A stretch of DNA of 64,000 nucleotides from Haliotis cracherodii (lineage: Eukaryota): contig NW_027266279.1 in the NCBI RefSeq assembly GCF_022045235.1, positions 10,230,001-10,294,000 of the forward strand, in the 5' to 3' direction. A program made the position numbers and the translations under genes. How positions within the stretch are numbered: the stretch's first letter is position 1; every line of letters starts with the position of its first letter. Below, in pieces: positions 16,614 to 44,097 of the stretch. The notes beneath the pieces are model-generated. The model was not told the DNA's origin. It saw nothing but the letters and a program-made list of their open reading frames with translations, and made no database searches.

Positions 16614-17216
16614 TTGGATTATTCCTCAAGCTCTTCTATCACTCCACCTGAAGTAGGACAAACGAGTGCACAGTTGAAATGTGTGTGTCTTGTACATGCT
16701 GATCACAAACGCGGACTAGGAAAGGACATAAGTTGCAATTAGAAAAACAAGAAATATCTGAAATAAGATAACCGCCGGTATATACATCAGGTGATTTAGG
16801 AGATAAATATACTGACGTTTATGACGTCACAGCCGGATATAGAAAAGCGATTTCAAGATCTCTGTTGTCCTTAAAACTTCAACTAGTCTCTCTAATTAGC
16901 CGATTTCTTTCAAGTTTTCTACCCAAAATGTATTTGGAATAGTGTAGCAAAGGCAACTCTGCATTTTGTAACCAATAATTGTACACAAGAAAGAGAATGT
17001 ATTTGTGTCATTATGGGGAACACAACGTTTCGGAGTATATACTACTATGTAAATTTGCTACGAAATTAGATTGGGGTACATAGGTATTCACTCAGTTTTC
17101 GTGTTAGTAACCTTCTGCACGGGTCTATATAATACTTTTGTTTAGTTTTCACGCCTAACTGGGTTAAGCGATAGGAGTTGGGTGAGGGGAAGGAGCCAGA
17201 CCCAGGGGGGTGAACA

Positions 17217-17260
<44 letters not shown>

Positions 17261-17284
17261 CAAATCGTATTCATCTTTCCTTAG

Positions 17285-19120: not shown

Positions 19121-20135
19121 TTACATACATACACGTCCCTCTCACCATACCTCTACATCGACCCCGCTATATCAACACCAGCCCTGGATCATCCGTGTTC
19201 ATGCTCACTTACACACAATACAGGTAATCTAGCTCTACATTGACCACAGAGTATCTCCACCCAACCGCGACGAATAACACGCGAAATCTTTGGAGTTAGC
19301 GAAGATTGGGTTGAGTCCAAGGTTACTTATGACTGTGTTGAATCGCTTAAAGGAAATACCGATTACAGCCTTTTAACAAAGTATGACGATTTTTATAATA
19401 AAACATCGTTTGTTGGCATGATATAATATAATACCTTACTGTCATATATCACAGGCATTCATGCGTCGAAGCTTCACTGTGGGGAAACGGGTGGATAAAA
19501 CGTTTCAGACATAACGCATAAACACCCGTTGACAGCAACGCTAACGTGTAAATTTGACAAAATGTAATCTGCAAATGGATTGTGTTTAAAATTGACGTTA
19601 TCTTACCAATTAATTCTCTGTATTCCGTCTATCTGGCAAATGGAATGTTGAAAGCCCACTTCCAGTTGACCTCAAATATGAAGCGACGAGTCGCACCCGT
19701 GACGACAGCCAAGTGAACTCGGATAAAAATAGTCTGTAAACGCTCTTGTATTTCCAAGTCAAAGGATTCCGGAAAGAGCCGAGGAATGCAAAGTGACAAC
19801 ACACCGGTTTGGTGTATTCATTCGTGACCAACTCGTGTTATTCCGGGACAAGCCGAAGAGCTTCTTGCCGGTTACGGAAAGGGACGAGTGGTGACGAATG
19901 TGCGCATTCTATTTCAGCTGTATGTTCGCTAACCGTCGCCTTTTCTTCCGCTTGACACGATGAATCCCGACGGGTGCGAATGACGGAGAAGATGACCCAG
20001 AAGCTCGCGCTCGACTCCACCCGCGGTGTGCTCAGGCTTTGATAAACATGACCTAGTTCAGTTCCTGTATTCCGTATTTACCTGTAATGACAGACAAACA
20101 CTACACATGAACAACGACGACAGAGTGAAGTTTAC

Positions 20136-24049: not shown

Positions 24050-24240
24050 GACATGATGCAGCAAGTATTTTTAGAAACAAGGTGTTACCAATAACGGCTT
24101 AAGACCCAGGTATCTCACCGGAGAAAAGATTATCTCCACAGGTCCCTCTGCAAGTGCTCTCACCGAAACCACATCCTGTTGACTTTATCGTCTCTCTGTA
24201 GGCTCCACACGGGAAGAGTCTTCGGGTATATATACAAAGC
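24050..24240 (+). promoter_or_regulatory. Conserved proximal promoter of His-rich gene copy 1 (paralogous blocks at ~29960-30130 and ~37280-37460)
   Basis: Alignable across all three copies: GATGCAGCAA..TTTTAGAAACAA, GATTATCTCCA, AAACCACA, TGACT, TATA box. Confidence 0.7.
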
Positions 24241-24298
24241 AACTCGTCTCCTCCTCATCAGTTCTCCTCTCCATTTAAAGGATCACAAGATTTTCACC

Positions 24299-25439
24299 AT
24301 GAAATTCTCACTCATCTTCGTTTTTGTTGGTAAGTATTTAAATGAATGGTATTTGTCTCATCCGTCTCGATTTTTTCAAATGCCCATTTTCAGGTGTAAT
24401 TTCTTTTGTTCCTTTTAGATCATAGTCATCGAAAATTGATTCCCAGCTCTGCGACACTTTTTTGAGACCAACTGTAATAATGAGCATTCTCTATATTATA
24501 ACCACTGATCAAATTTTTAATGAATCATTGCCGAAAAATATATTTCCATATTCGGGTTTTAGCCATCCTGAAGCCAACACTTTCGCATTTTTGCAATCCT
24601 TTTCATAACTAACAACAACTGCGCAATTCCATAACATCTTACGACAGGAGTGATCAGGGGGGCACGGGTGGTCCAGTCGTCTCAGGCGCCGCGATTCGCT
24701 GTGCAGAGTTGCGCCCCTTGGGCACACCAGAAACCTATGATTGTTTCCAATCCCGGTTCGCCCCGATTATGTTTCTAGGTTTGTCAGCACCATACCCGTG
24801 CACGTGGGTTTCACCGAAGTGGTAAACGTCTGAGACCTGATACTTGGGGCTTTCCTCCCACATTAGGCTGACACGCCGTGATATAATTGGAATAATGTTA
24901 AAAGCGGCGTTAAACCCAACTCACTCACTATATATTTACATCTGTGAAGGAAGGAAGAGACCATAGACACATCTGCTTATTGCGTACACAGTATCTGAAG
25001 CAATGTTAAAATAAACATTTGCCAGATGTATTTTGGTTTCTGTAGCTCTCACGTTTCTGAGAAGGTTAAAAGATTTAGCTTGAATTTGTGGTTGAAGCAG
25101 TAAAATAGACATCATCACTTACATATGTCTTTCATTGCAGCTATGCTTCTGGCTGTCAGCCTTGCCCATCGCCACCGTCGGCATCGTCATCACCACCACC
25201 ATCATCACTCCTCTTCAGTTAAGCACGTGCACCACTACCACTCATCGGGATCCTCAGGCTCCTCAGGCTCCTCCGGCTGCGGCTGTTGTGGAGGCAGCTC
25301 CGGATCCTCCTCTTCCTCCTCCGAGGACTACCCCATCCCCATCCCCGTCCCCATCTCTAGCGGCGGCAGCAGCAGCAGCGGCAGCAGTGGTGCCTCCGAC
25401 GCAGCCCTTCTGCAGGCTCTCATCAACGCTGGAAAATAG
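24299..25439 (+). CDS. Secreted His-rich/Ser-Gly-rich small protein, copy 1 (109 aa)
   Basis: Exon 1 24299-24329 (MKFSLIFVFV, G|gtaagt). Exon 2 25141-25439 after ttcattgcag; the phase-1 join gives signal peptide MKFSLIFVFVAMLLAVSLA. TATA at 24227; intron after the stop; 3'-UTR exon from 25886 with AATAAA ~25952. Confidence 0.9.
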
Positions 25440-26876
25440 ATGAAGATGTAAATAGACTATTATTCTAGGGCCTCTATTTTACAGTCTAAAGACTCACGAT
25501 CTATCATTTTAAATTTAATGGTAATGGCAGTGCCGAAGACCCGGGTTCGAATCCCCACATGGGTACAATGTGTGAAGCCCATTTTCCAGTGTCCCCCGTC
25601 GTAATATTGCTGGAATATTGCTAAAAGCGGCGTAAAAACTCACTCACTCACTCATCTTGCGTGGACCGTTGCTTATGATTTCAGTCAATGGTCCGCCTGG
25701 TACACATTCGATGATTCAATATTCACTCACTCATTACTGTGAGAGGTATACCACTGCCTCGCTGTTTTTGTTGAGGTCTTGGAAGTAAAAGGAGATGGCT
25801 TTTATTAAGACATTAAAAAATCACCATCCATGTCATCTGTCAAAAGGTCATGCATTTCATCTGAAATCGTTTTTATCTTTTTCAGCTACAATTTTCGGAT
25901 GAAGTCGTGGACGTTTGGTTCCTTTGGTTGTAATATTGGGAGCTTATGCTTAAATAAAAAAATTATTCGCAGAAAATAATATTCCCATTTAATACACAAA
26001 GAGGACGAACTCTCTATAAAGGGACTGATAATTATGAACTCATACAGCATTTTGTCCACGCCACAGCGCTTACTGACAACCTCACGGCATTACTGATAGG
26101 CATCACAAGAAGTTGATCTGTCTCCTCCTTCTGGGAACCCACCTGAAACACCTTGGGGAGACATCTGATGGGGTGAATAAGTGAAATTGGTTTACCGCAG
26201 TTTCCAAAAGTATTGTATGATAAAGTAGACACACGTTATGGAAAACGACTTCTTTAATCACAGTAAAGGCGACGTTTCGGTATAGAACCATAAATTGTGT
26301 CTACTTTGTCATCCGTTAACTTCTAAGTAATGTCTATCAAACAAGTATATATGACGGCGGTCTGTAAATAATCGAGTCTGGACCAGACAATCCAGTGATT
26401 AATATAATGAGCATCGATCCACGCAATTCAGATCGATGACATGCATCAACCAAGTCAGCGAGCCTGATCCCGTTAGTCGCCTCTTACGACAAGCATAGTC
26501 GCCATTTACGGCAAGCATGGGTTGCTGAAGACCTATTCTACCCCGGATCTTCACGTGTCCTTTTAAAAAAGAAGTAGACACGTTTCTTGTGAATGTGGAG
26601 AGGGTTTTGTCACTTTAATTAAATTTCATTGGAATGACATTTTCATCAAAACATGCCATGTCGCCCCTCAAAGAAATCATTACCTAATAAACAATTTTAT
26701 GTAATAACTGTGAAAGCCTATATTGCGCGAGTTGAGCATTTATAGTCAGTTTCTTGTCTACGTTTTACACTAACAGTGTATGAACAAACATTATCGGATT
26801 ATCTTCAATGGCAATGCAATTAAATAAACGCGACAAAACCATGAGAAATATCTGCTGAAAGCAGAGGCCATTGTAG

Positions 26877-27159
26877 TGAGTGAGTGAGTGAGTTGGGTTT
26901 AACGCCGCTTTTAACAGTATTCCAATTATATCACGGCGTGTCAGCTTAATGTGGGAGGAAAGCCCGAAGTGATGCAGGTCTCAGACGTTTACCACTTCGA
27001 TGAAACCCACGAGCACGGGTAGGGTGCTGACAAACCTAGAAACATAATCGGGGCGAACCGGAATTCGAACCCACAATCATAGGTTTCTGGCGTGCCCAAG
27101 GGACGCAACTCTGCACAGCGAAACCGGCGCCCTAGACGACTGGGCCATCCATGTCCCCC
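26877..27159 (-). mobile_element. tRNA-derived SINE, family B (~275 bp), representative copy
   Basis: A box TGGCCCAGTCG, B box GGTTCGAATCC, (ACTC)n tail, TSD GAGGCCATTGTA. Other copies: ~3464-3750, 14381-14660, 22845-23048, 24657-24929, 28143-28340, 28970-29245, 30415-30685(-), 32871-33145, 39146-39405, 39698-39995, 53688-53925(-), 60170-60373, 61395-61540, 61626-61910. Confidence 0.9.
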
Positions 27160-29362
27160 AGAGGCCATTGTACCGACTTTATCATTTACATTATGTTTAT
27201 GAATAACTATCAAACAGGTAAGGATATATATCCTTATATAAGGATGAACAACTTCTTTATAACAATTCCATATATCTTATCCTTACTTAGTACTCTAACT
27301 TCAAAATGCCTTTCAAACAAACTACCAATTTGTGATGAAAACAGTCTTTCGCGAAAAGATGAGTGGATCCTGTCCCACAAATGTCACTGATGTGTTAACT
27401 TTAGAAATGTCCTCTACATTTCAACCACAAAAACATTTTGAAAGCTTGATCGCTATAACCCTGAGGAAACAACTTTTGACGCATTAATGGTATGATTGGA
27501 ATATGATCATGACCGATCTGGCCTCAAAAGTTGTAAAATGGAGACACCAAAAACTTGAGCTGCTGGAATACATCTTCCCGAGGCAAGAGAGTTAACTGAC
27601 TTTAAAAGTCCAGTGCACATGCTTTGCAAATCCTGCAATCGACCGAAATCTGCACAACAGTTTACGAACCGGATTTCGATTTCGATGCGCGATTTTGATT
27701 GGACCATGCTTAGACTCGTTAGTCCAGCCAAAATATAACTCCATAATACCAGACTAGTTCGGCAAGGACGGAAACTGGACATTTTTAGTAAGTTAACTCC
27801 CTTGCCTTGGGAAGATGCTGGAATATTGATCGACATAAAGGGAACTTCAAGGTTGATCATTGGAAACTTGAAGAAATTCCTATTTTCATAGAGTGTTGTG
27901 AATGGTGTGTGTGTTGGGTATTCTGGACGTTGGACGCCCATTTATACACAATGAGTGGATGCCCATTGGATTACAGTAAACTACGGTTATAACGAACACG
28001 CTTATAACGAACTAACGGATATAACGAAGTAACTTTTAGTCCCGACTATATGCTGTAGTTATGCTGTATATATGCTTATAACGAATTACGGTTATAACGA
28101 ACTAAAATTAGTAGTCCCTTTGAGTTCGTTACATGTGGGGAAAAGGGGGTCAAGCCATCTAAGACTCACAGCAATTCGCAGTGCACAGTTGCCTCCCTTT
28201 GGCGTGCAAGGAACCTAGTTGTACGATCGTGTGTTTCAATCCGAGATCATGGTACTTGGTTTGTCAGCACCATACCCTTGCTCACGGGTTTCAGTAAGGT
28301 GGTAAACGTCTTAGATCTGCTTCAGGCTTTTCTCACCCATCAAGCGTGGACTATGATTCGAACCCACAATCATAGGTTTCTGGCGTGCCCAAGGGACGCA
28401 ACTCTGCCTAACGGACAGCCGTCAAACTAATGTAAAACAAAGGATAAATACGCAAATAGAAATAGTTTTTCACGTTTAAGGATAGTTTCTCAATGAAAGT
28501 TAACCATTTTATTACATATGTTTATCTACATGGAGATGTGTGGACTTTTCAGATGAGAAACATATTGTAATCTGTTGAATGACTGTAAGAGATGCGAGGA
28601 ATCGTCACAGCAGGCTGGATTGTGGCAGAGGTACTAGGTTGACCGCAAAGGAACTGTGGATAGAAAAGTGTTTTAAAGGCACAACTTACTTACAAACAAC
28701 AACGATTTTAAGGATGACTATATTTATCAAGGCAATTCTCAATCTGAAATGTTTGTAACGAAATACAGTAAACTACGTTTATGACGAACACGCTTATAAC
28801 GAACTGACCGATGTAACGAACATTTTTTTAGTCCCGACCATTTGTTGTAGAAATTTTGTATATATATGGTTAGACAGAGTTGCGTCCCCTGGGCATGCCA
28901 GAAACCTATGATTGTGGGTTCGAATCCCGGTTCGCCCCGATCGTGTTTCTTGGTTTGTCAGCACCATCACAGGTGGCCCAGCTGTCGAAGGTGCCGCAAT
29001 TCTCTGTGCAGAGTTGCGTCCCTTAGGCAGAAACCTATGATTATGGGTTCGAACCCGGGTTCGCTCTGATTATGTTTCTAGGTTTGTCAGAACCATACCG
29101 TAAATCCTCAAAGCAGGTCTTACCGAAGTGCTAAACGTTTGAGACCTGCATCACTTCGGGCGTTCCTCCAATATGAAGCTGACACGCCGTGATATAACTG
29201 GAATACTGTTAAAAGCGGTGTTAAATTCAACTCACTCACTCACTCTTTATAACCGGAGTTTACGGGACCACAAAGTGGCATGAACGTTTGCTGTACATCA
29301 GAAACACGGCTTCCATTTAGAACATCACACAGAACGCTGCACGGATAAGACAATCAAGAGCT

Positions 29363-29525
29363 AGTGAGTAAATATGGTTTTACGCCGCTTTTAGCAATAT
29401 TCCAGCAATATCACGGCGGGGGACACCAGAAATGGGCTTCACACATTGTATCCATGTCGGGAATCGAACCCGGGTCTTCGGCGTGACAAGCGAACGCTTA
29501 AACCACTAGGCTACCCGACCGCCCC
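29363..29525 (-). mobile_element. SINE family A
   Basis: Full length; TSD AAGACAATC(A/T)AGA. Confidence 0.85.
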
Positions 29526-30191
29526 AAGACAATCTAGAACAATTCGTGAGGAGTATATATCAAATGTCATGTTGACTAAGATAGAGAGGGGTATTGTATT
29601 AGACGTGAAAATTACGTCTTTAAACATCTTCATTGACTTCCAAATCAAATCTAAAACTTCACCGACAGAAAATGGCCAGTTTCAGCTCTCCGACGAAACA
29701 GATCCATTGAGAAAATAAACGACAAAACACGTTATCCGTAACATCAATGTTATCTTACTGCAAAATCAAAAAAATTAAAAGGGAAATAAATGTATACCAT
29801 ATATACGTTATCCTTAAGTAAAACGTGATCATCAAATTCTGTATGGTATTACTATGCTTTTATACATTGACCTTTTTTTACCCCTTTCACTAATTTTCAT
29901 GAAAATATAAAGCCTCTTGTCATCACATGAAAGCAGTTTTTCTCCATGCAACATCCCAGTGATGATGCAGCAAAGTCTATTTTAGAAACAAATTAAGACC
30001 TCGGAAACCACGGAGACAGGATTATCTCCACAGGTCCTGTTGCTCGTGCTCTCGTCAAAACCACACCCTGCTGACTTTATCGGTTGTCTATAGGCAAACA
30101 CATGGGAAGAGGTTTCTGGTATATATACACGACAACTTGTCTTTACAACACCAGTTCTCCTCTGCTCACAAAGGATTACAAGGCATTCACC

Positions 30192-30685
30192 ATGAAATTC
30201 TCGCTCATCTTCGTTTTTGTTGGTAAGTAAATATAATTGTTTCTAGACCTATATTGGGAATAATTAGTCTGGTATCAGTACATAACAATTTGCCTCTACG
30301 AAGGATCAAAACAAACTCAAAATGAAATTCTCACTTATCTTTGTGTTGGTTTGTGAGCATATTTTACGTAAAGGTTTTAATAACAGTGTGCATGTTGGAT
30401 ATAGATAGCGTGATTGTGTGTGTTGGATTTAACGCCGCTTTTAACAGTATTCCAGTTATATCACGGCGTATGAGCTTAATGTGGGAGGAAAGCCCGAAGT
30501 GATGCAAGTCTCAGACATTTACCACTTCAGTGAAACCCACGAGCACGGGTATGGTGCTGACAAACCTAGAAACATAATCGGGGCGAACCGGGATTCGAAC
30601 TCACAATCCTAGGTTTCTGGCGTGCCCAAGGGACGCAACTCTGAACAGCGAATCGCGGCGCCTCAGACAACTGGGCCACCCGTGG

Positions 30686-30740
<55 letters not shown>

Positions 30741-31158
30741 ATACAAAAGTCCGTAGATGAGCTGTATAATCGGTGTCACGAATGTGATTTTCAAGAGTCA
30801 TATTATATATATCATCAACTTCGATGTAGGGATTTAAACCAACATATCTATAATTCCAGCTATGCTTCTGGCTGTCGGCCTTGCCCATCACCACCGTCGG
30901 CATCGTCATCATCACCACCACCATCACTCCTCATCAGTTAAGCACGTGCACCACTACCACTCATCGGGCTCCTCAGGCTCCTCAGGCTCCTCCGGCTGCG
31001 GCTGTTGTGGAGGCAGCTCCGGATCCTCCTCTTCCTCCTCCGAGGACTACCCCATCCCCATCCCCGTCCCCATCTCTAGCGGCGGCGGCAGCAGCAGCGG
31101 CAGCAGTGGTGCCTCCGACGCAGCCCTTCTGCAGGCTCTCATCAACGCTGGAAAATAG
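30192..31158 (+). CDS. Secreted His-rich/Ser-Gly-rich small protein, copy 2 (109 aa)
   Basis: Exon 1 30192-30222, exon 2 30860-31158, same phase and structure as copy 1. TATA ~30120; 3'-UTR exon from 32082 with AATAAA ~32126. Confidence 0.9.
30686..30739. repeat. (GATA)n microsatellite
   Basis: Seen directly, in intron 1 of His-rich copy 2. Confidence 0.95.
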
Positions 31159-32870
31159 ATGAAGATGTAAATAGACCTATATATACAGTTCTTCGTATGG
31201 CATATCTTCATCACTGATTCAAAGAAATGTTTTTATTTGTTTTATAATTGATTTGATTAGTGTGTGAAAGATTATAGTCCACTTTGGTATATCATTTTCA
31301 ACACGATGAGACCATGGTGCGAGGAGAGACGGTGGAGTTCATGTTTCGATTACCTGGCCGCAGTCATACCATAGTATGGGGCGGTCGGGTAGCCTAGTGG
31401 TTAAAGCGTTCGCTCGTCACGCCGAAGACCCGGGTTCGATTCCCGACATGGGTACAATGTGTGAAGCCCATTTCTGGTGTCCCCCGCCGTGATATTGCTG
31501 GAAAATTGCTAAAAGCGGCGTAAAACCATACTCACTCACTCTCGTTAAAACAGCAATTATTTTTATCCTGCCTGCCGCTTGGTATTAAGGGGACTGGTCG
31601 GCTGGGAGTCAGTAGGACGTGTCTGTGTACGGTATCCATGCTAAACAATAATGACGAGCGCGTTGTTAAATCCGATTTCACCTCACTTGACTTCAAACGA
31701 TGTCTTAAATGACGTATTTTGAAGACGTTTCCTTATCAGTTAAAACCCCGACAATCCAAAGGTTTTGGCTTGTTTGTTTGTTGTTTAACGCCGCACTCAG
31801 CAATATTCCAGCTATATGACGACGGTCTGTAAATAATCGAGTCTGACCAGACAATCCAGTGATTGATATAATGAGCATCGATCTACACAAGTGGGATACG
31901 ATGACATCCATCAACCAAATCAGCGAGCCTGACCACCCGATCCCGTTAGTCGCCTTTTACGACAAGCATAATCGCCATTATCTGTTGTCTGGTTCCAGTC
32001 CAATATAGCTCCGCTGCTCACGGAACGTATCAAAAACATCCTGATTCATGCATTAGCTTCAATTTTAGTTTTCTTTTTCAGTTGCCATTTTCGGATGAAG
32101 TCACGTTTTGCATCTTTGACGGAGAAATAAAAAATATCTTCTTAAGAAAATGGTTTTCTTTTCTGTCCGATGTAATTCCCTATTCTGACTTGTACAATAT
32201 GTTCCCGTGTTCTTTCAGGTGAACAATCGACTTGCCCTTGCATGTGTTTGTGACGGGTGCCACCGGTGGGGCAGGATACGCTCACCTTTTTACGAACACC
32301 ATCATCTGTATCATTACTATTTGATAGTGATTCATAAACACATGCTCATGATATAGTCAGAATCGTACAATCGACTCTGCTTTGTGCAGATATTTCTATT
32401 GGATATGGAAAGGGTTTTGTCGGGTAGCCTAGTGGTTAAAGCGTTCGCTCGTCACGCCGAAGACCCGGGTTCGAATTTCGACATGGGTACAATGTGTGAA
32501 GCCCATTTCTGGTGTCCCCCGCCGTGATATTGCTGAAATATTGCTAAAAGCGGCGTAAAACCAAAACTGACTCATTCACTCACTTTATTTCATTATTTTC
32601 CTGCAAAGAAACGTACCTAATGTCATACTTGTGGGCTTATACAACGCATTATTCACACAATAGGTGTCCACTGAAAGATCCCACACCAGATATGCCATTG
32701 TATACCTTGTATAACTGGGTTTAAGGAAGCCATCGTGTTGTTGAAGGGGTGGTCGGGTAGCCTAGTGGTTAAAGTGTTTGCTCGTCACGCCGAAGACCCG
32801 GGTTCGAATTCCGACATTGGTACAATGTGTGAAGCCCATTTCTGGTGTCCCCCGCCGTGATATTGCTGGA

Positions 32871-33145
32871 GGGGGCACGGGTGGCCCAGTCGTCTAAGGC
32901 GCCGCAATTCGCTGTGCAGAGTTGCGTCCCTTGGGCACGCCAGAGACCTATGATTGTGGGTTCGAATCCCGGTTCGCCCCAATTATGTTTCTAGGTTTGT
33001 CAGAACCATACCCGTGCTCGTGGGTTTCACCGAAGTGGTAAACGTCCGAGACCTGCATCACTTCGGGCTTTCCTCCCACATTCAGCTGACACGCCGTGAT
33101 ATAACTGGAATAATGTTAAAATCGGCGTTAAACCCAAATCACTCA
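32871..33145 (+). mobile_element. SINE family B nested in SINE family A
   Basis: 13-bp TSD TGATATTGCTGGA at 32858-32870 and 33146-33158, inside the family A tail. Confidence 0.92.
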
Positions 33146-35711
33146 TGATATTGCTGGAATATTGCTAAAAGCGGCGTAAAACCGTACTCACTCACTCACT
33201 CATCGTGTTGGATCCACAGCCCTGAACGTTTCTAAAAACACGTGACCTAGGTATGCAACAATGAATTTGATGACCACAACACAAGTGTTGTGACCATCAG
33301 TGTAACATCTTGATTGCGCTTTTATTCACATTTACCACCCAAAATGCAGACTTCCTGGCTTAAGTCAACATTACAGGAAGTCCGCAAGGAACACGTGACA
33401 TGAGTTCATCATAAATCCATTTTCTGTACACGGCACAAGTGTTATAACAAATATGACATTTCTAGAAATTATATGAAACGTCAACGACAGTGAATAATCA
33501 GTTTCGATTATCTGCCGGAACAGATTTCATTGGGCATAAAGACCCGTGAAGATCCGGGGTAGAATAGGTCTTCAGCAACCAATGCTTGCTGTAAACGGCG
33601 ACTATGCTTGTCGTAAGAGGCGACTAACAGGATCAGGTGGTCAGTCTCGCTGACTTGGTTGATGTATGTCATCGAATCAAAATTGCATGGATCGATGCTC
33701 ATGATGTCAATCACTGGACTGTCTGGTCCATACTCGATTATTTATAGAACGCCGTCATATAGCTGGAATATTGCTGAGTGCGGCGTTAAACAACAAACAA
33801 AATTTTAAAAAACATTGGGCATAAAAAAAAACAAATTAACGCAAAAACTGCTGGCATGACAATGAAAACATTGTTTGAGGATTAAGTAGCGCTTGGCTAC
33901 CTTAAGTGAAGGTCTGACATATTCGCCATGTCAAGATTGTCTACGGTGGTGTGAGAGTTAAACTTAATGGGCCGTGTTTCGTCAATTAAGATGTGTTAGG
34001 AATGAACGCTGTACTTCATGGCGAGCTGATTATCAGTATTTTCCATCCATACATCTACTAACATTATCGTTGGTTTAATAGTTTGTTCGTGCAATGTGCA
34101 TGTATCGGTATCTACGTACTATTGATATTTTGAGTAGTCATCGTTATATTGACTTCGACCCATGAGCTATCATATTGCAAATATAACATGATTCATCCTT
34201 ACACCCCATTTATACACATTCTCGAGGTCAAAAGTTTTTGTTGTTGTTTTTTAAATTCAGAAAATAACTTTAGTAACTGTTTATGACCTTTGTAGTTTTA
34301 GCTGTTGCAGTTGTTAGCTATTTAAAAAATTACAAGTAATATAATATCTATTGTTTTATATCATTTGAATTGTTACTTCAATTATTACTTAATTATTTAA
34401 TGATTGTGTCTTCACAGCCACGTGGTATACATTATTTTGATTTGATCTTTCACCTCAACATTCAGAAGCTCTGTATAGTCGCATTTAGACGTACTTTTAG
34501 GAGGAATTAGTACAACACTAGTTTGAAACAGAGCTATACTAAACCCTCTTCCTTGCTCCCGAATAATTTTCTGTTTCAGAATACGTTAGACGCGTATTGT
34601 TTTCCTATTATTATTGTAGATACATGATTAGACAAAAACAAATAAGATGCAGGTACTTCATAGATTTATAACTGATTTAAGATTTCAGCCCCAACAGCCC
34701 ACTGAGTGACGATGTGCCTAAAGTACTAGTATTATAAAGTTTATGACAGATCAACAGAATCTGATATGTACGTCAGCTATGTATGAGTCTATTTATTGAG
34801 AAGGACGTTAAAGACAATTATGAAACTGTCGAAACTTATTTTTAACACATTACGAACGCATACGACTGCGTTCTGACAATGATAGGAATTCCAGATCATT
34901 GAGGATAGTAATCCGACTTTTTCACTTTTCGTGTCGTGGCGCCGTCTGATCTCAAACGGGAGCGATAATCGGCACTGTGTGAACGCAGCCTTACTTAATG
35001 TATCAAGACAATACACCATACTGCACAGCTTATGAATGAATTACTCATTGTTTGAAAGAATAATATAAAATGCAACTTAGCTTCATTGGAATCTGTCAAA
35101 ACCGGACTGTGACTAATTGGGCTTTATGTCCGGACCACATTTACTGCATAGAATAATATATCCTTCATCCACAACTTTACTTTACCAGTTCTTATACAAT
35201 AGTCTCACTTCTCCGCACCTCTATCTGAAGCCAGGGATTTACCTTGGTCGGTCTCTTTTCGAGTCAAGAGTGAGTGAGTGAGTGAGTGAGTATGGTTGTA
35301 CCCATGTCGGAATCGAACCCGGGTCTTCGGCGTGACGAGCGAACGCTTTAACCACTAGGCTACCCGACCGCCCATCGAGTCAAGAGGACTCCCAACAGTA
35401 CAATAGAAGTACAAGAGTACAGCATTGGCACGCTTCACTTGATTTCCAGGAATGTTATTGATTTCATAGCACATGCTCAGAAGCATTTATTGGGGAAATA
35501 TTTTTTGACCGAAGAAAATTAATCATTGACACTCTGATTTTTTTAGTAATTTCTTGCCTGAATAGAAATGCCGATTCCATGAAACATGCAAGCTACAATT
35601 TTGATAAATGTAGAGATTCCAAGAACCATAATGTTTATTATTTGTTTCCAACCTCAATTTGTAGGACGCAGTAATATGCGTCCTGTAAGTCTCAGCCAGT
35701 CTGGACCAGAA

Positions 35712-35980
35712 GACCCGTGAAGATCCGGGGTAGCATAGGTCTTCAGCAACCCATGCTTGCCGTAAAAGGCGACTATGCTTGTCATAAGAGGCGACTAACG
35801 GGATCGGGTGGTCAGGCTTGCTGACTTGGTTGATGCATGTCGTCGATCTCAATTGCCTGGATCGATGCTCATGATATTAATTACTGGATTGTCTTGTCCA
35901 GACTCAATTATTTACAGACCGCCGTCATATAACTGGAATATTGCCGAGTGCGGCGTTAAACAACAAATAAACCAACCAAC
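35712..35980 (+). mobile_element. Non-tRNA short retroposon, family C (~270 bp), representative copy
   Basis: Starts GACCCGTGAAGATCC, contains GCTTGTCGTAAGAGGCGACTAA, ends GCGGCGTTAAAC(AAAC/AACC)n. More than 20 copies, e.g. 2130-2375, 3795-4000, 4035-4228(-), 6230-6498(-), 9985-10242(-), 12125-12330, 12998-13268, 21682-22027, 22577-22840(-), 26347-26560(-), 31765-31978(-), 33541-33800, 38711-38955(-), 41971-42240, 54415-54686(-). Confidence 0.88.
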
Positions 35981-36815
35981 TGGACTAGAATATACAGTGA
36001 CTAATGTTATGAGCAAGGATTCACGCTGTCGGGGCACGCTGACACACTATCATCCAAGTCACCAAGCCTGACTGCCCAGCAATTGATCCGTGATTTGCTT
36101 CTTACAAGAAAAGCTTGCCGTGGACCAGTTCTTACCAGGAATTCGTACTGGGATTGAACAGTATGCATTCAAATCCTTCCCCAAAATGACACAAACGAAA
36201 TACAAAATATATGCCAATAGTTACATAATTTAGTTTTTCTCCTTGATAAAGTTTCAATTTCCACTCAGGTTGTTCATAGCTTTCCTTCAATGACATGTTA
36301 AATAACACGGAATGTGAATAACATTAAATTTCAATTGTTAAATAAATTTTAAATAAATTCAAAACGTCAACGTAAGAGAATACCCAGTCTGTCGAATGAA
36401 GGTTATCGATCACTGAAACTCAGCGATTAAATCAGGTGTTCGCGAACAGGTAAAGCATGTCCTGCTATATCGGTAGCGCCCGCTAACTACACACTTTTTG
36501 GATAAAACAAAGTAAGTGTCAGCTTGTTGCCATCGCCGCACCAAGCAATACGCCTGCAATCCGACGGCGGTCTGTAAACAGTCGAGCCTGGACAGACAAT
36601 ACAGTGATAGGTAAATTGAGCAATGATCAGCATCGTCATGCTGTCAACCAAATCACGAAAACACCCGGTCCATTAAAGTTAACGATCAATATACATCACC
36701 GTCAACCTTGAAATACAGTAAACTACGGTTATAACGAACACAAAGGAACCGCTAATTTTAGTTCGTTATAGCCGTAGTTCGTTATAAGCATATATTCAAC
36801 CTCTATACATCAAAT

Positions 36816-36980
36816 GGGGCGGTCGGGTAGCCTAGTGGTTAAAGCGTTCGCTCGTCATGACGAAGACCCGGGTTCGATTCCCGACATGGGTACAATGTGT
36901 GAAACCCATTTCTGGTGTCCCCCGCCGTGATATTGCTGGACTATTGCTAAAAGCGGCGTAAAACCATACTCACTCACTCA
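36816..36980 (+). mobile_element. SINE family A inserted in a pogo/Tc1-type MITE
   Basis: 13-bp TSD CTATACATCAAAT at 36803-36815 and 36981-36993. Confidence 0.9.
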
Positions 36981-37522
36981 CTATACATCAAATAGCCGGG
37001 ACCAAAAATAAAATTCGTTATATCCGTCAGTTCGTTATAAGTGTGTTCGTTATAAACGTATTTTACTATATATAAAACGCTTTGTGAAATATCAAAACAC
37101 AGTTTGGACACCATGCCTAATTTTAACCCGAACTATTTGACAAACCGTTTCCCTCACATCTTACTGTTTTTCATAGACAATGTACAATCCCTCGTGATGA
37201 CATAGAAGCGGGTTCAATGAAATCATTTAACCCAAGTCATCATAAGAGTTTGTGATGAAGTATAAAATTTAATGTGACATGATGCAGCAAGGTTTATTTT
37301 AGAAACAAGGTTTAATCACAACAACTTAAGACCCAGGAATCTCATCGGAGGTAAGATTATCTCCATAGGTCCCGCTGCCAGTGGTCTCGCCCAAACCACA
37401 TCCTGTTGACTGTATCGACTCTCTGTAGGCTCCACGTGGGATGAGTTTTCAGGTATAAAAACACGACAACTTGTCTCCTCCTCATCATTTCTCTTCTCAC
37501 AAAGGAAAAGAAGACACTCAAG

Positions 37523-38410
37523 ATGAAATTCTCACTCATCTTCGTTTTTGTTGGTAAGTAAAGTGTATGAATTATAATATACTAAATGTGAAAAACATTT
37601 GGATAACCATAAGCATATACTCACAGTAACATAGCAACGTGTTTTGTCATTTGTTACTTGAGAATGCCAGATGTTGGAGGAATTACTGTATTCTTACTAT
37701 TTCATAATAATTACTAGTAGCTATTGCCAAGAAAATGTGTTGCCAAATGTTACTAAACAACGCATCATTACCTCCGAAACCACCAACAGTATGAGCAGTT
37801 TTTAACATGGCATCGAAAAATATTTTTAAAAAAATTATCAAATATTGCCAGTTGTTATTTTCTTCCTATGAAAAGTGTTATATTGGGCGAAGCAAAAACA
37901 GACACGGCGCCATGATAAACTCTCTGTCAGCTCAAAAGGGAAAACATCTAAAATTTAATCCAAAAATCAGAACTAGCTAATCTATGGAATAAGAAAGCAA
38001 GTTGTTTCAGTGTTTGATAAAAAGGCCTGTTGTCATTTCAAAAATCATCTGTCAGGTTTCCTTATTTTCGAAAAAGAAATGAAAGTTACATGTATGTCAT
38101 TCCAGCTATGCTTCTGGCTGTGAGCCTTGCCCATCGTCACCGTCGGCATCGTCATCACCACCACCACCATCATCACTCCTCTTCAGTTAAGCACGTGCAC
38201 CACTACCACTCATCGGGCTCCTCAGGCTCCTCAGGCTCCTCCGGCTGCGGCTGTTGTGGAGGCAGCTCCGGATCCTCCTCTTCCTCCTCCGAGGACTACC
38301 CCATCCCCATCCCCGTCCCCATCTCTAGCGGCGGCGGCAGCAGCAGCAGCGGCAGCAGTGGTGCCTCCGACGCAGCCCTTCTGCAGGCTCTCATCAACGC
38401 TGGAAAATAG
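37523..38410 (+). CDS. Secreted His-rich/Ser-Gly-rich small protein, copy 3 (111 aa)
   Basis: Exon 1 37523-37553, exon 2 38106-38410. TATAAAA at 37454; 3'-UTR exon from 38994 with AATAAA at 39051. Confidence 0.9.
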
Positions 38411-39697
38411 GCGATGAGGTAAAGATAATGTTATGTTGTAGCCTGAAGTCCTCCGGAATTAAACAGTTCAAAGGAAAGTATTACAATCAATGTGCGTAAA
38501 TTGTGTAACATAACATGGGGATTTTATCTCAACTTTTAGCAGTAAACAAGTTTCACCGGGGCAGATTTCTTGTTTATTAGGGAAGTTAACCAGGCGTTTA
38601 TCTCTAGATCTTTAGTAAACATCCAACTCTCAACATCATCTGTGTATGGATAAATGATTTTTTTCTGTACTGGGGACTGAAACGATTCCTGTTAAGTCCC
38701 AGATTCATGCTTTGTTTGTTTGTTTGTTGTTTAACGCCGCACTCAGCAATATTCCAGCTATATGACGGCGGTCTGTAAATAATCGAGTCTGGACCACGCC
38801 GTGTCCGTTTTTGCGCATTTGGGATCGATGACATGCATCAACCAAGTCAGCGAGCCTGACCACCCGATCCCGTTTGTCGCCTCTTATGACAAGCAGAGTC
38901 GCCTTTTACGGCAAGCATGGGTTGCTGAAGACCTATCCTACCCCGGATCTTCACATGCATTGTCCCTGATACTGTATTTTCACTCTTTTTCAGTTACCAC
39001 TTTAAAGTCTCTGCTGGCAGCTTTGAATGTAACATTGGAACAAAGGATTGAATAAATATACTTTTAGGAAAATGGTAGTTTTGTTCCTTTCATTATTTTC
39101 TGACAATGATAAGCACACATTATATGATATTCTTATAATATGAAAGGGGCGCAGTTAGGCCTGTTGTCTAAGGTGCCGCAACTCTTTGTGCAGAGTTGCG
39201 TCGCTTGGGCAGAAACCTATGATTATGGGTTCGAACCCCTGGTTCGTTCGGATTGTGTTTCTAGGTTTGTCGGAACCATACCGTGCTCGTGGGTTTCCAT
39301 CAAGGGGTAAACCCCTGAGACCTACATCACTTGGAGCTTTCCTCCCACATTAAACTGACACGCCGTGATATAACTGGAACACTATTTAACCCACCTCACA
39401 CAATCACTATTATATAAAATGTGCTTCTGCTCTTTTAATAATGCAAGATGTACCAAATATTTGTTGAGTTCTGGGACAAGTTCTTTAGCATGGACATATG
39501 CCATCTTGGTTCCAGCACCAAACCAGGGAAGGACCCAACTATGCTGGCTTCATACAGACTAATTAAATATACATTTTAAGAATGATAGCACCTTATTTAG
39601 TTATTAAAATCAAGAAATACTCATACAAGTTTATTACGTGATAAAAAGAAAAGTTATAATGAATATATGTAATAAGATTTTATCAAGTCTTCCAAAT

Positions 39698-40380: not shown

Positions 40381-41277
40381 TTGTTGCTGTAATCCCACCC
40401 CATACCATAACGCTGCCGCCCCCGAACCGATCTTCTTCCATGACACAATGATTGACGTAACGTTCACCTCGACGTCGGTACACTCGAATCCGTCCCTCGC
40501 TGTGGCTGAGGTGAAAACGAGTGAATAGAATTAATGTCCAGCGTCAATGAATGCATGGCCGCCCAGCGTAGACGCTGTCTACACCACTGAAGGCGTGCTT
40601 GACGGTGGTTTCTTGTCAAAATGGGACGTCTGGCGGGTCTACTGGCGACATTCCCTGCACATCTGAGGCGACGACGTACGGTTTGTGAAGATATTCGTCG
40701 AAGGCCATGGATGCTTCTTGCAGTCACTGTTGCTGGCTGGAATCGATTTCCTAGGTGTGTTGTTCGAATCCTGTTGTCTTGTCGATTATTGGTTACGCGT
40801 GGCCTGCCACTCCGAGGATGGTCTCTGACTGCATTCGTCTGTTGCCAATGTTGCCATAAACACCAAATGGTGCTTCTGTGGACGTTAAATTGTCTTGCAA
40901 CATCACATTGACTCGATCCTGTTTCAAGCATACCAATGGTTCGCAGACGCTCATTTTAGGACAGGCTGAATTACTTTCGTAATATTGAATAATTGCGTAA
41001 TTTTGTGTTTTTTCTGAGTGCATGGTTGTTGTCAGCACGATGCTAAACAATGCATATGGAATCCCGTTAATGCACATGTTTTTAAACCCATTCTTGGGTA
41101 GTGAAATGCATGGGGCTTGCATAAAAGTCAACTTTTGCATGGAATGCATGCTTTTCTGTAAAAGTTACGCTTTTGTGACTTGATTCCATACATGTACTAC
41201 AATACTGAAAACCAAACTTAACTGTTTGAAAAATACACTAAAATATTGGTGTCACGGGAACTTTTGTTGCTGAGTAT
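40381..41277 (-). mobile_element. Truncated, frameshifted Tc1-family transposon
   Basis: ORF 40931-40464 encodes the paired HTH region (VARQFNVHRSTI, RSGRPRVT, SSQTVRRRLR, RPILTRNHRQARLQWC). A shifted frame gives RRRGERY..DRFGGGSVMVWGGIT. TA-TACTCAGCAACAAAAGTT terminus at ~41277; the catalytic C-terminus is missing. Confidence 0.9.
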
Positions 41278-41480: not shown

Positions 41481-42242
41481 TGTGAAGGATAAGGTACGAG
41501 GTGAGGTCTTTGTGCCTGGATGCAGACCCTAGGGGGGTCGGGATGGAAATATTTCCAACCCAACCCCCTCAGGTCTGTGTCCAGGCACAAAGACTGAACC
41601 GAGTCCTTTATCCGACTTATGAACCGAAAAATTTACAAGAATTTGTAATGTTTTATGAAATTTTGTTTCTATTCTCTGCCTTTTTAACCCATCACTCATA
41701 TTGATCGTACCCCGCGGTAGTGCGCCAATCAGAGCTAACCATTTCGTCACGTGCTTGCCCCTGCCTCGTAATGCACGCGCTTTGAATGTGGACTGAGCGG
41801 CACATGGTCGCTGTTGTTTGCAGTGTGCGGTTGCCTTTCAGACAGGGATGATGACATTTTTCTAACGCAAAGTAAGTTTTGATCTGGACGCGAAAGACAA
41901 TAATTTTCGTTTTCTACCACCAATCAGCTTTGAGGACCTGCAAGGCGAGTTGAAAGACTGTACCCCTTAGGACCCGTGAAGATTCCGGGGTAGAATAGGT
42001 CTTCAGCAATCCATGCTTGCCGTAAAAGGTGACTATGCTTGTCGTAAAAGGCGAATAACGGCATCGGGTGGTCAGGCTCGCTGACTTGGTTGGCGCATGT
42101 CATCAATCCCAATTGCGTGTTAATGCTCATGATATTAATCACTGGATTGTCTGGGCCAGTCTCGATTATTTACAGACCGCCATCATATAGCTGGAATATT
42201 GGTGAGTGCGGCGTTAAACAACAAACCAACCAACCAACCAAC

Positions 42243-43815
42243 ACTGTCACAGCTACATCACAGCCGCACCACATCTTTCTCAATACTACATCACAGCCGC
42301 ACCACGTCTCTGTCATAGCTACATCATAGTCGTACCACGTCTCTGTCATAGCTACATCAAAGCCGCACCACGTCTGTCATAGCTACATCATAGTCGTACC
42401 ACATCTCTGTCATAGCTACATCATAGTCGTACCACGTCTATGTCACAGCTACATCACAGCCGTACCACGTCTATGTCACAGCTACATCACAGCCGTAACA
42501 TGTCTGTCACAGCTACATCACAGCTGTAACATGTCTGTCACAGCTACATCACAGCCGTAACATGTCTGTCACAGCTACATCACAGCCGTACCACGTCTGT
42601 CATAGCTACATCACAGCCGTAACATGTCTCTGTCATAGCTACATCACAGCCGTACCACGTCTCTGTCACAGCTACATCACAGCCGCACGTCTGTCATAGC
42701 TACATCATAGTCGTACCATGTCTGTCATAGCTACATCACAGCCGTACCACGTCTCTGTCACAGCTACATAACAGCCGCACCACGTCTGTCATAGCTACAT
42801 CACAGCTGCACCACGTCTCTGTCATAGCTACATCACAGTCGTACCACGTCTATGTCACAGCTACATCACAGCCGTACCACGTCTATGTCATAGCTACATC
42901 ACAGTCGTACCACGTCTGTCACAGCTACATCACAGCCGTACCACGTGCCTGTCACAGCTACATCACAGCCGTACCACGTCTATGTCATAGCTACATCAAA
43001 GCCGCACCACGTCTGTCATAGCTACATCATAGCCGTACCATGTCTGTCACAGCTACATCACAGCCGTACCACGTGCCTGTCACAGCTACATCACAGCCGT
43101 ACCACGTGCCTGTCACAGCTACATCATAGCCGTACCACGTCTGTGTCACAGCTACATCACAGCCGTAACATGTCTCTGTCACAGCTACATGACAGCCGTA
43201 CCTCGTCTGTCACAGCTACATGACAGCCGTAACATGTCTGTCACAGCTACATCACAGCCGTAACATGTCTGTCACAGCTACATCACAGCCGTACCACGTC
43301 TCTGTCACAGCTACATCACAGCCGTACCACGTCTGTCATAGCTTCATCACAGCCGTAACATGTCTCTGTCATAGCTACATCACAGTCGTAACATGTCTGT
43401 CACAGCTACATCAGTCGTACCACGTCTGTCACAACTACATCATAGTCGTGCCACGTCTGTCACAGCTACATCATAGTCGTACCATGTCTCTGTCACAGCT
43501 ACATCATAGTCATACCACGTCTATGTCACAGCTACATCACAGCCGTACCACATCTCTGTCAAAGCTACATCATAGTCATACCACGTCTCTGTCATAGCTA
43601 CATCACAGCTGTAACATGTCTCTGTCACAGCTACATCACAGCCGTACCACGTGCCTGTCATTGGTACATCACAGCCGTACCATGTGCCTGTCATTGGTAC
43701 ATCACAGCCATACCACGTGCCTGTCATTGGTACATCACAGCCGTACCACGTGCCTGTCATTGGTACATCACAGCCGTACCACGTGCCTGTCATAGGTACA
43801 TCATAGTCGTACCAC
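42243..43815. repeat. 29/31-bp minisatellite, ~50 copies
   Basis: Unit tgtcacagctacatcacagccgtaccacgtc(tc). Confidence 0.95.
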
Positions 43816-43829
43816 TTCTAAGTCAGTCA

Positions 43830-44097
43830 GGACCGCCTCCGTGGTCAAGTGGTAGAGCGTCCACCCAGAGAGCGGAAGGTCCGGGGTTCGATTCTCGGCC
43901 GCGTCATACCAAAAGACGTTAAAAGATGGTACTTGTTATTACCCTGTCTGGTGCTCGGCATTAAGGGGTTAAAGCAAGGACTGGTCGGCTCGTAGTCAGT
44001 ATACTGTGTCTGATTGGGGTATTTATGTTAAACTGCGGCATGGTATCTCAGTGGGCTAGCACTATAAATGGGCATCAGTCCGGACTAGTACAAGCAG

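What the first reader, a model, noticed from the sequence alone, without database searches (positions are those of the whole stretch)
24050..39060. Tandem cluster of three genes for an unrecognised secreted, modular His-rich mini-protein
Seen: three intact genes with TATA box, signal-peptide exon, main exon and separate 3'-UTR exon. The predicted ~90-aa mature protein has sharp modules: HRHRRHRHHHHHHH (cationic poly-His), SSSVKHVHHYH, (SSG)n, a lone CGCC motif, poly-Ser plus EDY, PIPIPVPI, a second Ser/Gly linker, and an amphipathic DAALLQALINAGK end. I cannot assign it to a known family. Established: His-rich blocks bind Zn/Cu and drive pH-dependent assembly in invertebrate load-bearing materials (mussel byssus preCols, squid beak and polychaete jaw proteins) and occur in antimicrobial peptides; secreted S-x-E motifs are FAM20C kinase targets. 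Inference: a lineage-specific metal-binding structural, biomineral or mucus protein, or a defence peptide, amplified for dosage.
Basis: partly seen in the sequence, partly recalled or inferred. Interest (0 to 1): 0.82.

Follow-up and report, generated by a model that had tools for sequence, protein, structure and literature searches.

The report
Unannotated abalone His-rich secreted protein family
The three genes are real by sequence and evolutionary tests and belong to an unannotated abalone family of at least 24 genes for small, secreted, floppy, histidine/serine-rich proteins that all end in an amidation signal, but whether and where they are expressed, and what they do, is untested.

Summary
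Three + strand genes (A 24227-25985, B 30120-32155, C 37454-39080) each have a TATA box, a 31-nt signal-peptide exon in phase 1, a 299-305-nt main exon, a splice donor 8 nt after the stop, and a short third exon with AATAAA.

New findings:
- The trio is part of a family of at least 24 intact genes on three contigs of this genome, which earlier scan notes call black abalone.
- All 21 modelled members share the three-exon layout. They keep two invariant Cys, a Y-P-I-P-I-P-x-P motif, and a hydrophobic tail ending in Gly plus 0-3 Lys/Arg, which is an amidation signal.
- The His block varies from 0 to 56 residues.
- dN/dS is 0.05-0.3 with synonymous sites near saturation. Only the His-rich frame behaves as coding.
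- No relative was found in any protein, family, structure or paper search.

AlphaFold gives disorder plus one C-terminal helix.

Expression could not be tested: the one read-laying run was swamped by SINEs and exon 2 was masked. Function is inferred only: a pH- and metal-switchable extracellular protein, either a matrix component or a defence peptide. This family was not noted on other DNA by the scan; other His-rich abalone families were.

The parts
24227..24234 (+). Gene A TATA box (TATATATA), 72 nt upstream of the ATG
   Evidence: the same element lies 60-90 nt upstream of the ATG in 20 of 21 paralogues
24299..24329 (+). Gene A exon 1 coding part: MKFSLIFVFV plus the first base of a split Ala codon (phase 1); donor GTAAGT at 24330. 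The transcript start is inferred near 24258.
25141..25447 (+). Gene A exon 2: the rest of the signal peptide and the whole 90-aa mature protein; stop TAG at 25437-25439; donor GTAAAT at 25448
   Evidence: frame validated by pN/pS
25886..25985 (+). Gene A putative 3'-UTR exon (acceptor TTTTATCTTTTTCAG, AATAAA at 25953-25958). The 3' end is approximate.
   Evidence: Inferred from signals; no transcript seen.
30120..30127 (+). Gene B TATA box
30192..30222 (+). Gene B exon 1 coding part (MKFSLIFVFV + G), donor GTAAGT at 30223
30860..31166 (+). Gene B exon 2 (stop at 31156-31158, donor GTAAAT at 31167)
32082..32155 (+). Gene B putative 3'-UTR exon (AATAAA at 32126-32131). The 3' end is approximate.
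37454..37461 (+). Gene C TATA box (TATAAAAA)
37523..37553 (+). Gene C exon 1 coding part (MKFSLIFVFV + G), donor GTAAGT at 37554
38106..38418 (+). Gene C exon 2 (stop at 38408-38410, donor GTAAAG at 38419)
38994..39080 (+). Gene C putative 3'-UTR exon (AATAAA at 39051-39056). The 3' end is approximate.

Best explanation
Shown by sequence and evolution:
- The three units are real protein-coding genes. They belong to an unannotated, apparently abalone-restricted family of at least 24 genes in tandem clusters on three contigs.
- Each gene has a TATA promoter, a signal peptide split by a phase-1 intron, one main exon, and an intron just after the stop codon.
- The products are small (46-192 aa mature), secreted and predicted to be disordered.
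- The conserved core is a Cys cluster (CGCC, CCC, CSSC, CGC or CCKKSCC), a Ser run, (E/D)(D)YPIPIP(V/I)P, a Gly/Ser/His linker, and a 10-12-residue hydrophobic tail of two types (DAALLQALINA or N-Y/F-LPIVLTT). The tail always ends in Gly plus 0-3 Lys/Arg.
- In front of this core sit variable modules: a His/Arg block of 0-56 His and a Ser/Glu block.

Inferred:
- The proteins pass through the regulated secretory pathway. The basic residues are trimmed and the terminal Gly is converted to a C-terminal amide (my odds about 0.65).
- The Ser runs next to Glu/Asp are phosphorylated by Fam20C-type kinases.
- The protein then acts as a block polyampholyte. Its His block changes charge near pH 6-7 and binds Zn/Cu/Ni. 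It condenses or cross-links through His-metal bridges, its odd-numbered cysteines and its hydrophobic amidated tail.
- It would thereby form or modify an extracellular layer: mucus, an adhesive, or a mineral-associated matrix.

I put the reality of the genes at about 0.9 and this matrix reading at about 0.4. The three near-identical window copies most likely serve dosage.
For: Gene reality:
- All 24 exon-2 matches are open frames without stops.
- 21 of 21 modelled paralogues have a phase-1 acceptor inside the signal peptide.
- 20 of 21 have a 10-12-codon hydrophobic exon 1 with a GT donor, and 19 of these end in G. All 20 have a TATA box 60-90 nt upstream of the ATG.
- 21 of 21 have a GT splice-donor-like site within about 20 nt after the stop. 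Eleven of the 22 after-stop sequences examined (the 21 plus the incompletely fetched C14:11784) match GTRAG, against about 5% expected per gene by my estimate.
- dN/dS is 0.05-0.3 while dS reaches 0.8-2 between subfamilies. For example, A against C14:11766 gives dS 1.5 and dN 0.08.
- pN/pS exceeds 1 in the other two frames for eight of nine pairs tested; the ninth is a close pair (frame +1 0.35 against 0.21 in frame 0, frame +2 2.55).

Core and tail:
- The alignment shows two invariant Cys, the invariant P-I-P-x-P, a nearly invariant Tyr, and Gly as the last non-basic residue in every member across both tail types.

Disorder and helix:
- The AlphaFold2 model has mean pLDDT 57. Its only element is a helix at residues 84-97.

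Plausibility of the modifications:
- Copper type II monooxygenase domains (the PHM type) and Fam20C domains are encoded in this genome.
- S-x-E motifs number 1 to 7 per protein.

Dosage:
- Proteins A, B and C differ at 1-3 residues plus 1-2-residue indels.
Against: - No transcript evidence. In three runs guessed to be RNA, depth over exon 1 and exon 3 of gene A was zero or nearly so, and exon 2 was masked by the tool. Tissue and stage are unknown.
- No protein of the family is in a collection of about 15 billion predicted proteins. It has therefore not been annotated or assembled from transcripts there.
- Subfamilies without a His block keep the core. Metal and pH switching therefore cannot be the family's basic function.
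- C-terminal amidation is typical of peptides (hormones, toxins, antimicrobial peptides). To my knowledge it is not typical of structural proteins.
- The self-association test gave no answer.
- Metal binding, phosphorylation, amidation and assembly are all inferred from sequence alone.
Confidence: 0.42

Rival explanations
1. Host-defence effectors. The proteins are amidated antimicrobial or metal-withholding peptides. They would work like histatins or clavanins: the His/Arg block gives pH-dependent charge and chelates Zn/Cu/Ni, and the amidated hydrophobic tail inserts into microbial membranes.
For: - An amidation signal is present in every member.
- The proteins are small and the genes have TATA promoters.
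- The genes form tandem multigene clusters with mosaic combinations of modules.
- Several members are strongly cationic, with pI 9-11.4.
- Other His-rich amidated peptide genes were noted in the same genome by the scan. Those notes are unchecked.
Against: - Selection is purifying, not diversifying (dN/dS 0.05-0.3).
- Several members are neutral or acidic, with pI 4.5-7.
- The tail has a low hydrophobic moment (0.21) and no charge.
- The long Ser/Gly and Ser/Glu stretches are unusual for membrane-active peptides.
- No processing site would release a short peptide.
Confidence: 0.3
2. Precursors of a signalling peptide (hormone, neuropeptide or pheromone). The amidated C-terminal segment would be the active part.
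For: - Each protein has a signal peptide and a C-terminal Gly-(Lys/Arg) end.
- The tail is the most conserved segment within each tail type.
Against: - No dibasic or monobasic cleavage site precedes the tail in any member.
- The family has at least 24 genes in tandem arrays.
- The poly-His, Ser/Glu and Cys modules are conserved under purifying selection, which a discarded propeptide would not need.
Confidence: 0.08
3. Not functional genes. The open frames would be a by-product of a GC-rich low-complexity repeat that spreads by duplication and gene conversion.
For: - There is no transcript evidence and no entry in protein collections.
- A second frame is also open in all three copies.
- Exon 2 is more alike (98-99%) than the promoter (79-82%), which suggests gene conversion.
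Against: - Substitutions between old paralogues fall at third codon positions of one frame only.
- The splice sites, split signal peptide, TATA box and donor after the stop are conserved in paralogues whose synonymous sites are saturated.
- Only one truncated relic was found (C29:1940432-1940560).
Confidence: 0.05

Closest known systems
Histatins (vertebrate salivary His-rich peptides; from my own knowledge)
   Same: - Small, secreted, His-rich and cationic.
- They bind Zn/Cu.
- They carry an S-x-E phosphorylation site.
- They are encoded by tandemly duplicated genes.
   Different: - There is no sequence relation: Pfam and profile searches are blank.
- Histatins are 24-38 aa and lack a Cys cluster, the PIPIPVP motif, Ser/Gly linkers and an amidated hydrophobic tail.
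Clavanin- and piscidin-type His-rich amidated helical antimicrobial peptides (from my own knowledge; clavanins are mentioned in PMC11767717)
   Same: - Secreted and His-rich.
- C-terminally amidated.
- They contain a helical segment.
   Different: - In those peptides the His residues lie inside a strongly amphipathic helix of 20-25 residues that is released from a propeptide.
- Here the His residues lie in a separate disordered block.
- The helix here is short, uncharged and weakly amphipathic.
- No cleavage site exists here.
Polyelectrolyte cement and hard-tissue proteins of marine invertebrates: sandcastle-worm Pc3 with Pc1/2, Nereis jaw Nvjp-1, mussel mfp-4 and preCol His domains (from my own knowledge)
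   Same: - Secreted, disordered and low in complexity.
- Poly-Ser stretches can be phosphorylated next to basic or His-rich stretches.
- His-metal cross-links and pH-triggered condensation are the accepted mechanisms in those systems.
   Different: - No homology was found.
- Here both charge blocks sit in one protein of about 90-190 aa.
- Here the proteins are richer in Ser than in Gly, have a conserved non-repetitive core, and carry an amidation signal.
- Their tissue is unknown.
Bivalve plasma histidine-rich glycoprotein / extrapallial (EP) protein (from my own knowledge)
   Same: It is an abundant secreted His-rich mollusc protein that binds Ca and heavy metals and is linked to shell formation.
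   Different: It is much larger (about 28 kDa) and a folded glycoprotein. It was not tested here, and no match appeared in the profile search.

Membership tests
Any Pfam family (including histatin/statherin-type and YxzE-like bacteriocin PF25184) | Score above the curated gathering threshold | tested here: not met
   The best match was PF25184 at 16.9 bits against a cut-off of 40. None of the 21 paralogues matched any family at E <= 0.01.
Any previously predicted protein family | A significant sequence relative in public protein collections | tested here: not met
   - Word search on the whole exon 2 and on residues 56-99: nothing.
- Profile of 21 paralogues against 1.84 billion representatives: two hits at E 1e-5 to 1e-4, both unrelated repetitive proteins.
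- Exact look-up of 7 forms: absent.
- PDB: nothing below E 0.04.
- ESM Atlas: best score 0.78.
C-terminally amidated secretory peptides/proteins (PAM substrates) | N-terminal signal peptide | tested here: met
   The hydrophobic exon 1 plus the start of exon 2 end in small residues at -3 and -1 (for example S-L-A|H). This rests on sequence inspection only; no SignalP was run.
C-terminally amidated secretory peptides/proteins (PAM substrates) | Gly as the last residue, followed by the stop or by basic residues | tested here: met
   - All 21 aligned members and 3 further copies end in G, GK, GR, GKK or GKKK.
- This holds across both tail types and across saturated synonymous divergence.
C-terminally amidated secretory peptides/proteins (PAM substrates) | The amidating enzyme is present in the organism | tested here: inconclusive
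   There are 25 exon-level matches to the Cu2_monooxygen domain PF01082. That domain is shared with dopamine-beta-hydroxylase-like proteins, and PHM itself was not singled out.
C-terminally amidated secretory peptides/proteins (PAM substrates) | An amide found on the native product | not testable with these tools
   This needs mass spectrometry of the native protein.
Fam20C-type secretory phosphoproteins | S-x-E/pS motifs in a secreted protein, with the kinase present | tested here: met
   - The window proteins have one S-x-E motif, at the end of a run of six Ser.
- The long paralogues have up to 7.
- Fam20C domain PF06702 is encoded at three loci.
- Actual phosphorylation cannot be tested here.
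His-rich amidated amphipathic helical antimicrobial peptides (clavanin/piscidin type) | An amphipathic cationic helix with a high hydrophobic moment, released by propeptide cleavage | tested here: not met
   - The tail has a hydrophobic moment of 0.19-0.29 and no basic residue once the Lys is trimmed.
- No basic cleavage site lies upstream of the tail.
Marine His-rich load-bearing proteins (Nvjp-1, squid beak HBPs, mfp-4, preCol) | Sequence relation or the characteristic Gly/His or Ala/His repeat units; location in a hard tissue or thread | tested here: not met
   - No sequence relative was found.
- The composition is Ser 31%, His 16%, Gly 14%, with one poly-His run rather than GH-type repeats.
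- Tissue location cannot be tested here.

The most novel reading that the evidence does not exclude
This is a previously unseen class of abalone secreted proteins: amidated block polyampholytes. A conserved Cys-cluster/PIPIPVP/amidated-tail core is fitted with a tunable poly-His block (0-56 His) and a phospho-Ser/Glu block. Different paralogues would therefore condense, bind metal or attack membranes at different pH and metal levels. That would make the family a genetically graded set of pH/metal switches for building or defending an extracellular surface.
Probability: 0.25. Interest if true: 0.72.

Novelty: new variant of a known kind. Interest (0 to 1): 0.5.

Why it matters
If these genes are expressed, this is a sizeable gene family that genome annotation and public protein collections have missed.

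Standard shotgun proteomics would probably miss it too. This is my inference: trypsin would cut the window protein into a few tiny His/Arg pieces and one fragment of about 70 residues.

The family offers a natural series of poly-His lengths on a constant scaffold. That is useful for studying pH- and metal-triggered protein condensation, mollusc surface materials or innate defence. It would also be an uncommon case of C-terminal amidation on whole small proteins rather than on excised peptides.

For black abalone, an endangered species affected by withering syndrome, any new secreted defence or mucus component has practical interest.

Tried and rejected
Expression:
- The look-up of sequencing runs followed by read laying. 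The listed runs shared words with the SINEs in the introns, not with the exons.
- Exon 2 (25166-25394) was skipped by the tool as a repeat in all four runs, including the DNA run.
- Exon 1 and exon 3 had zero or near-zero depth in the three runs guessed to be RNA.
Expression is therefore neither shown nor excluded.

Relatives. All of these gave nothing usable:
- two word searches;
- the profile search (its two hits, P0001 and P0002, are unrelated repeat proteins);
- Pfam;
- PDB;
- ESM Atlas;
- exact look-up;
- papers searched by motif strings;
- papers searched by keywords.

I did not search with the joined exon 1 + exon 2 protein.

Self-association. A complex-prediction job with four copies of residues 58-99 returned no answer (score 0.02). 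It is no evidence either way.

Considered and rejected:
- A GPI anchor signal: the hydrophobic tail is only about 10 residues.
- C29 being a haplotype copy of this window: the promoter is only 84% identical and the flanks differ.
- The alternative open frame 25135-25443: pN/pS exceeds 1.
- The tandem arrays at 17-19 kb and 42-44 kb being related genes: they are non-coding minisatellites by their ORF content.

Full report
**1.

The window contains three + strand units with one layout.

Gene A:
- TATATATA at 24227-24234.
- ATG at 24299, with 31 coding bases (MKFSLIFVFV plus a G) ending at the donor GTAAGT (24330).
- An 811-nt intron.
- Exon 2 at 25141-25447, which starts with CT and so completes an Ala codon.
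- Stop TAG at 25437-25439 and a donor GTAAAT eight bases later (25448).
- A pyrimidine-rich acceptor ending at 25885, then about 70 bases up to AATAAA (25953).

Genes B and C match this feature for feature:
- B: ATG 30192, exon 2 30860-31166, exon 3 from 32082.
- C: ATG 37523, exon 2 38106-38418, exon 3 from 38994.

The deduced signal peptide is MKFSLIFVFVAMLLAVSLA.

Identity among the copies differs sharply by region:

| Region | Identity among A, B, C |
|---|---|
| Exon 2 | 98-99% |
| Exon 1 | 92-98% |
| Promoter | 79-82% |
| Introns | not alignable, filled with different SINEs |

**2. The trio is part of a much larger family**

Searching the window's own genome with exon 2 as DNA and as protein gave 21 and 24 matches. 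All protein matches are open frames without stops. The genome is 1.18 Gb in 80 contigs, and earlier scan notes call it black abalone.

The matches lie in clusters at:
- C29:1.93-2.05 Mb (at least 12);
- C16:12.36-12.42 Mb (at least 5);
- C14:11.76-11.79 Mb (at least 4);
- C16:7.96 Mb (1);
- this window (3).

I fetched these loci and modelled 21 members:
- All 21 have an AG acceptor in phase 1 inside the second half of a signal peptide.
- 20 of 21 have an upstream exon 1 of 10-12 hydrophobic codons plus one base before a GT donor. That base is G in 19 of the 20.
- Each exon 1 has a TATA box 60-90 nt upstream of the ATG, and the intron is 250-2500 nt long.
- All 21 have a splice-donor-like site 0-20 nt after the stop. 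Eleven of the 22 after-stop sequences examined (the 21 plus the incompletely fetched C14:11784) match GTRAG. By my estimate about 5% per gene would do so by chance.

**3. What is conserved and what varies**

Invariant or nearly so:
- two Cys of a cluster (CGCC, CCC, CSSC, CGC or CCKKSCC);
- a Ser run;
- Y-P-I-P-I-P-(V/I)-P;
- a Gly in the linker;
- Gly as the last non-basic residue, followed by nothing, K, R, KK or KKK.

The hydrophobic tail comes in two types: DAALLQALINAG and (T/S)N(Y/F)LPIVLTT(G/A)G.

Variable:
- a His/Arg block of 0 to 56 His (the C14:11776 protein is one-third His);
- a Ser/Glu block, (SE)n, in the long forms;
- a short IIVHHHH or VKHVHHY element.

Tail type and N-terminal type occur in mosaic combinations, which suggests exchange of modules between paralogues.

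One truncated relic (C29:1940432-1940560) and one variant with a Pro-rich tail (C29:1945019-1945393, which also ends in Gly) were seen.

**4. They evolve as protein-coding genes**

- Nei-Gojobori estimates on the codon alignment give dN/dS of 0.05-0.3. dS is 0.8-2 between subfamilies; for example, A against C14:11766 gives dS 1.5 and dN 0.08.
- In the two other frames pN/pS exceeds 1 for eight of nine pairs tested. The exception is one close pair, whose +1 frame gives 0.35 against 0.21 in the coding frame. The second open frame seen in all copies is therefore a by-product of composition.
- Within the window, dS is 0.06-0.09 and dN is 0.005-0.014. dS is lower than the promoter divergence, which fits some exon-limited gene conversion or GC-biased repair (exon 2 GC 0.62 against 0.33-0.45 in the flanks).
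- The near-identical products fit amplification for dosage.

**5. No known relatives**

| Search | Result |
|---|---|
| Pfam, window proteins | best 16.9 bits against a cut-off of 40 |
| Pfam, all 21 paralogues | nothing |
| Word search, whole exon 2 | nothing |
| Word search, non-repetitive residues 56-99 | nothing |
| Profile of 21 paralogues against 1.84 billion cluster representatives | two weak hits, both unrelated repeat proteins |
| Exact look-ups | absent |
| PDB | nothing |
| ESM Atlas | nothing |
| Full-text paper searches for motif strings | no hits |

Reviews of abalone antimicrobial peptides list no such protein.

Eukaryotic genomes other than this one could not be searched. One DNA data set from a close relative or a divergent individual covers the unique parts of the locus at about 95% identity (X18).

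**6. Structure and chemistry**

- AlphaFold2 with the paralogue alignment gives mean pLDDT 57 and pTM 0.17. The only element is a helix at residues 84-97, the tail. Confidence is somewhat higher over the EDYPIPIPVP stretch.
- The window proteins are 31% Ser, 16% His and 14% Gly, with pI about 9. Across the family, pI runs from 4.5 to 11.4.
- The tail has a mean hydrophobicity of 0.41 but a hydrophobic moment of only 0.21. It is hydrophobic rather than clearly amphipathic.
- The genome encodes copper type II monooxygenase domains and Fam20C domains. Amidation and S-x-E phosphorylation are therefore possible, but unproven.

**7. Expression could not be tested**

- The runs offered shared words with intronic SINEs.
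- When the reads were laid, exon 2 was masked as a repeat in every run, including the DNA run.
- Exon 1 and exon 3 had zero or near-zero depth in three runs that are only guessed to be RNA and whose tissue is unknown.

**8. Interpretation**

Shown:
- a real, conserved, unannotated multigene family of small secreted disordered proteins;
- a fixed core and a tunable His block;
- a universal C-terminal Gly-(basic) end.

Inferred from established biochemistry:
- Peptidylglycine alpha-amidating monooxygenase acts on exposed C-terminal Gly after carboxypeptidase trimming.
- Fam20C phosphorylates S-x-E/pS.
- Imidazole titrates near pH 6-7 and binds Zn/Cu/Ni.

From these steps I infer that the products are amidated, probably phosphorylated, and responsive to pH and metals.

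My odds:

| Reading | Odds |
|---|---|
| Extracellular matrix-type role: condensation or cross-linking in mucus, adhesive or a mineral-associated layer | about 0.4 |
| Defence role of the histatin/clavanin type | about 0.3 |
| Signalling-peptide precursor | under 0.1 |
| Non-functional repeat | about 0.05 |

The amidation signal and small size favour the peptide-like readings. The purifying selection, Ser/Gly/Glu linkers, odd cysteine number and weakly amphipathic tail favour the matrix reading. A test of self-association gave no answer.

**9. Novelty and verdict**

No defining feature of any named family is met beyond general signatures (signal peptide, amidation end, S-x-E). Orphan, secreted, low-complexity His-rich families are a known kind in molluscs, and the scan has noted several others in this genome. 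None of them is this one. I therefore class it as a new variant of a known kind. Interest is moderate and would rise if tissue-specific expression and amidation were shown.

Noticed in passing
window 30322-30352: Intron 1 of gene B holds a decayed second copy of exon 1 (MKFSLIFVLV, then T and GTGAGC). It has no TATA box upstream. It looks like a partial tandem duplication of the first exon.
   Followed up: partly
window 42180-43900: A 33-nt-period minisatellite of more than 50 copies with strong negative GC skew. The frames are open only as repeat artefacts, and it is unrelated to the His-rich genes.
   Followed up: no
window 17100-19300: A long C-rich tandem array (GC skew down to -0.35) with overlapping repeat-derived open frames. 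It lies next to the region where other first-stage notes describe scramblase-exon repeats.
   Followed up: no
window 40464-40931 (- strand): A 155-aa open frame that looks like the N-terminal DNA-binding part of a Tc1/mariner-type transposase. It is probably a transposon remnant. It was not run against Pfam.
   Followed up: no
window 24650-24930, 25520-25650, 26348-26560, 26875-27160, 29363-29526, 38700-38955 and others: Many copies of a few SINE families, some ending in (ACTC)n, fill the introns and spacers of the cluster in both orientations. They dominated the read-laying and the choice of runs, so the word shares in the look-up of sequencing runs were misleading.
   Followed up: partly
window 25135-25443, 30881-31162, 38127-38417: A second frame (Pro/Ala/Thr-rich) is open across exon 2 in all three copies. 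Substitution patterns (pN/pS > 1) show that it is not the coding frame.
   Followed up: yes
L012:6433-6561 (G000:C29:1940432-1940560) and L019:1020-1394 (G000:C29:1945019-1945393): Two odd members in the C29 cluster. One is a truncated relic that keeps only the EDYPIPIP-to-tail part. The other has the His block and Cys cluster but a Pro/Gln/Leu-rich tail ending in FGLLG.
   Followed up: partly
family-wide (alignment A2): Tail type and N-terminal module type occur in mosaic combinations. For example, the C16:12.37 Mb genes pair the ETVIVHHHH/CSSC modules of the LPIVLTT-tailed genes with the DAALLQALINAG tail. This suggests recombination between paralogues.
   Followed up: no
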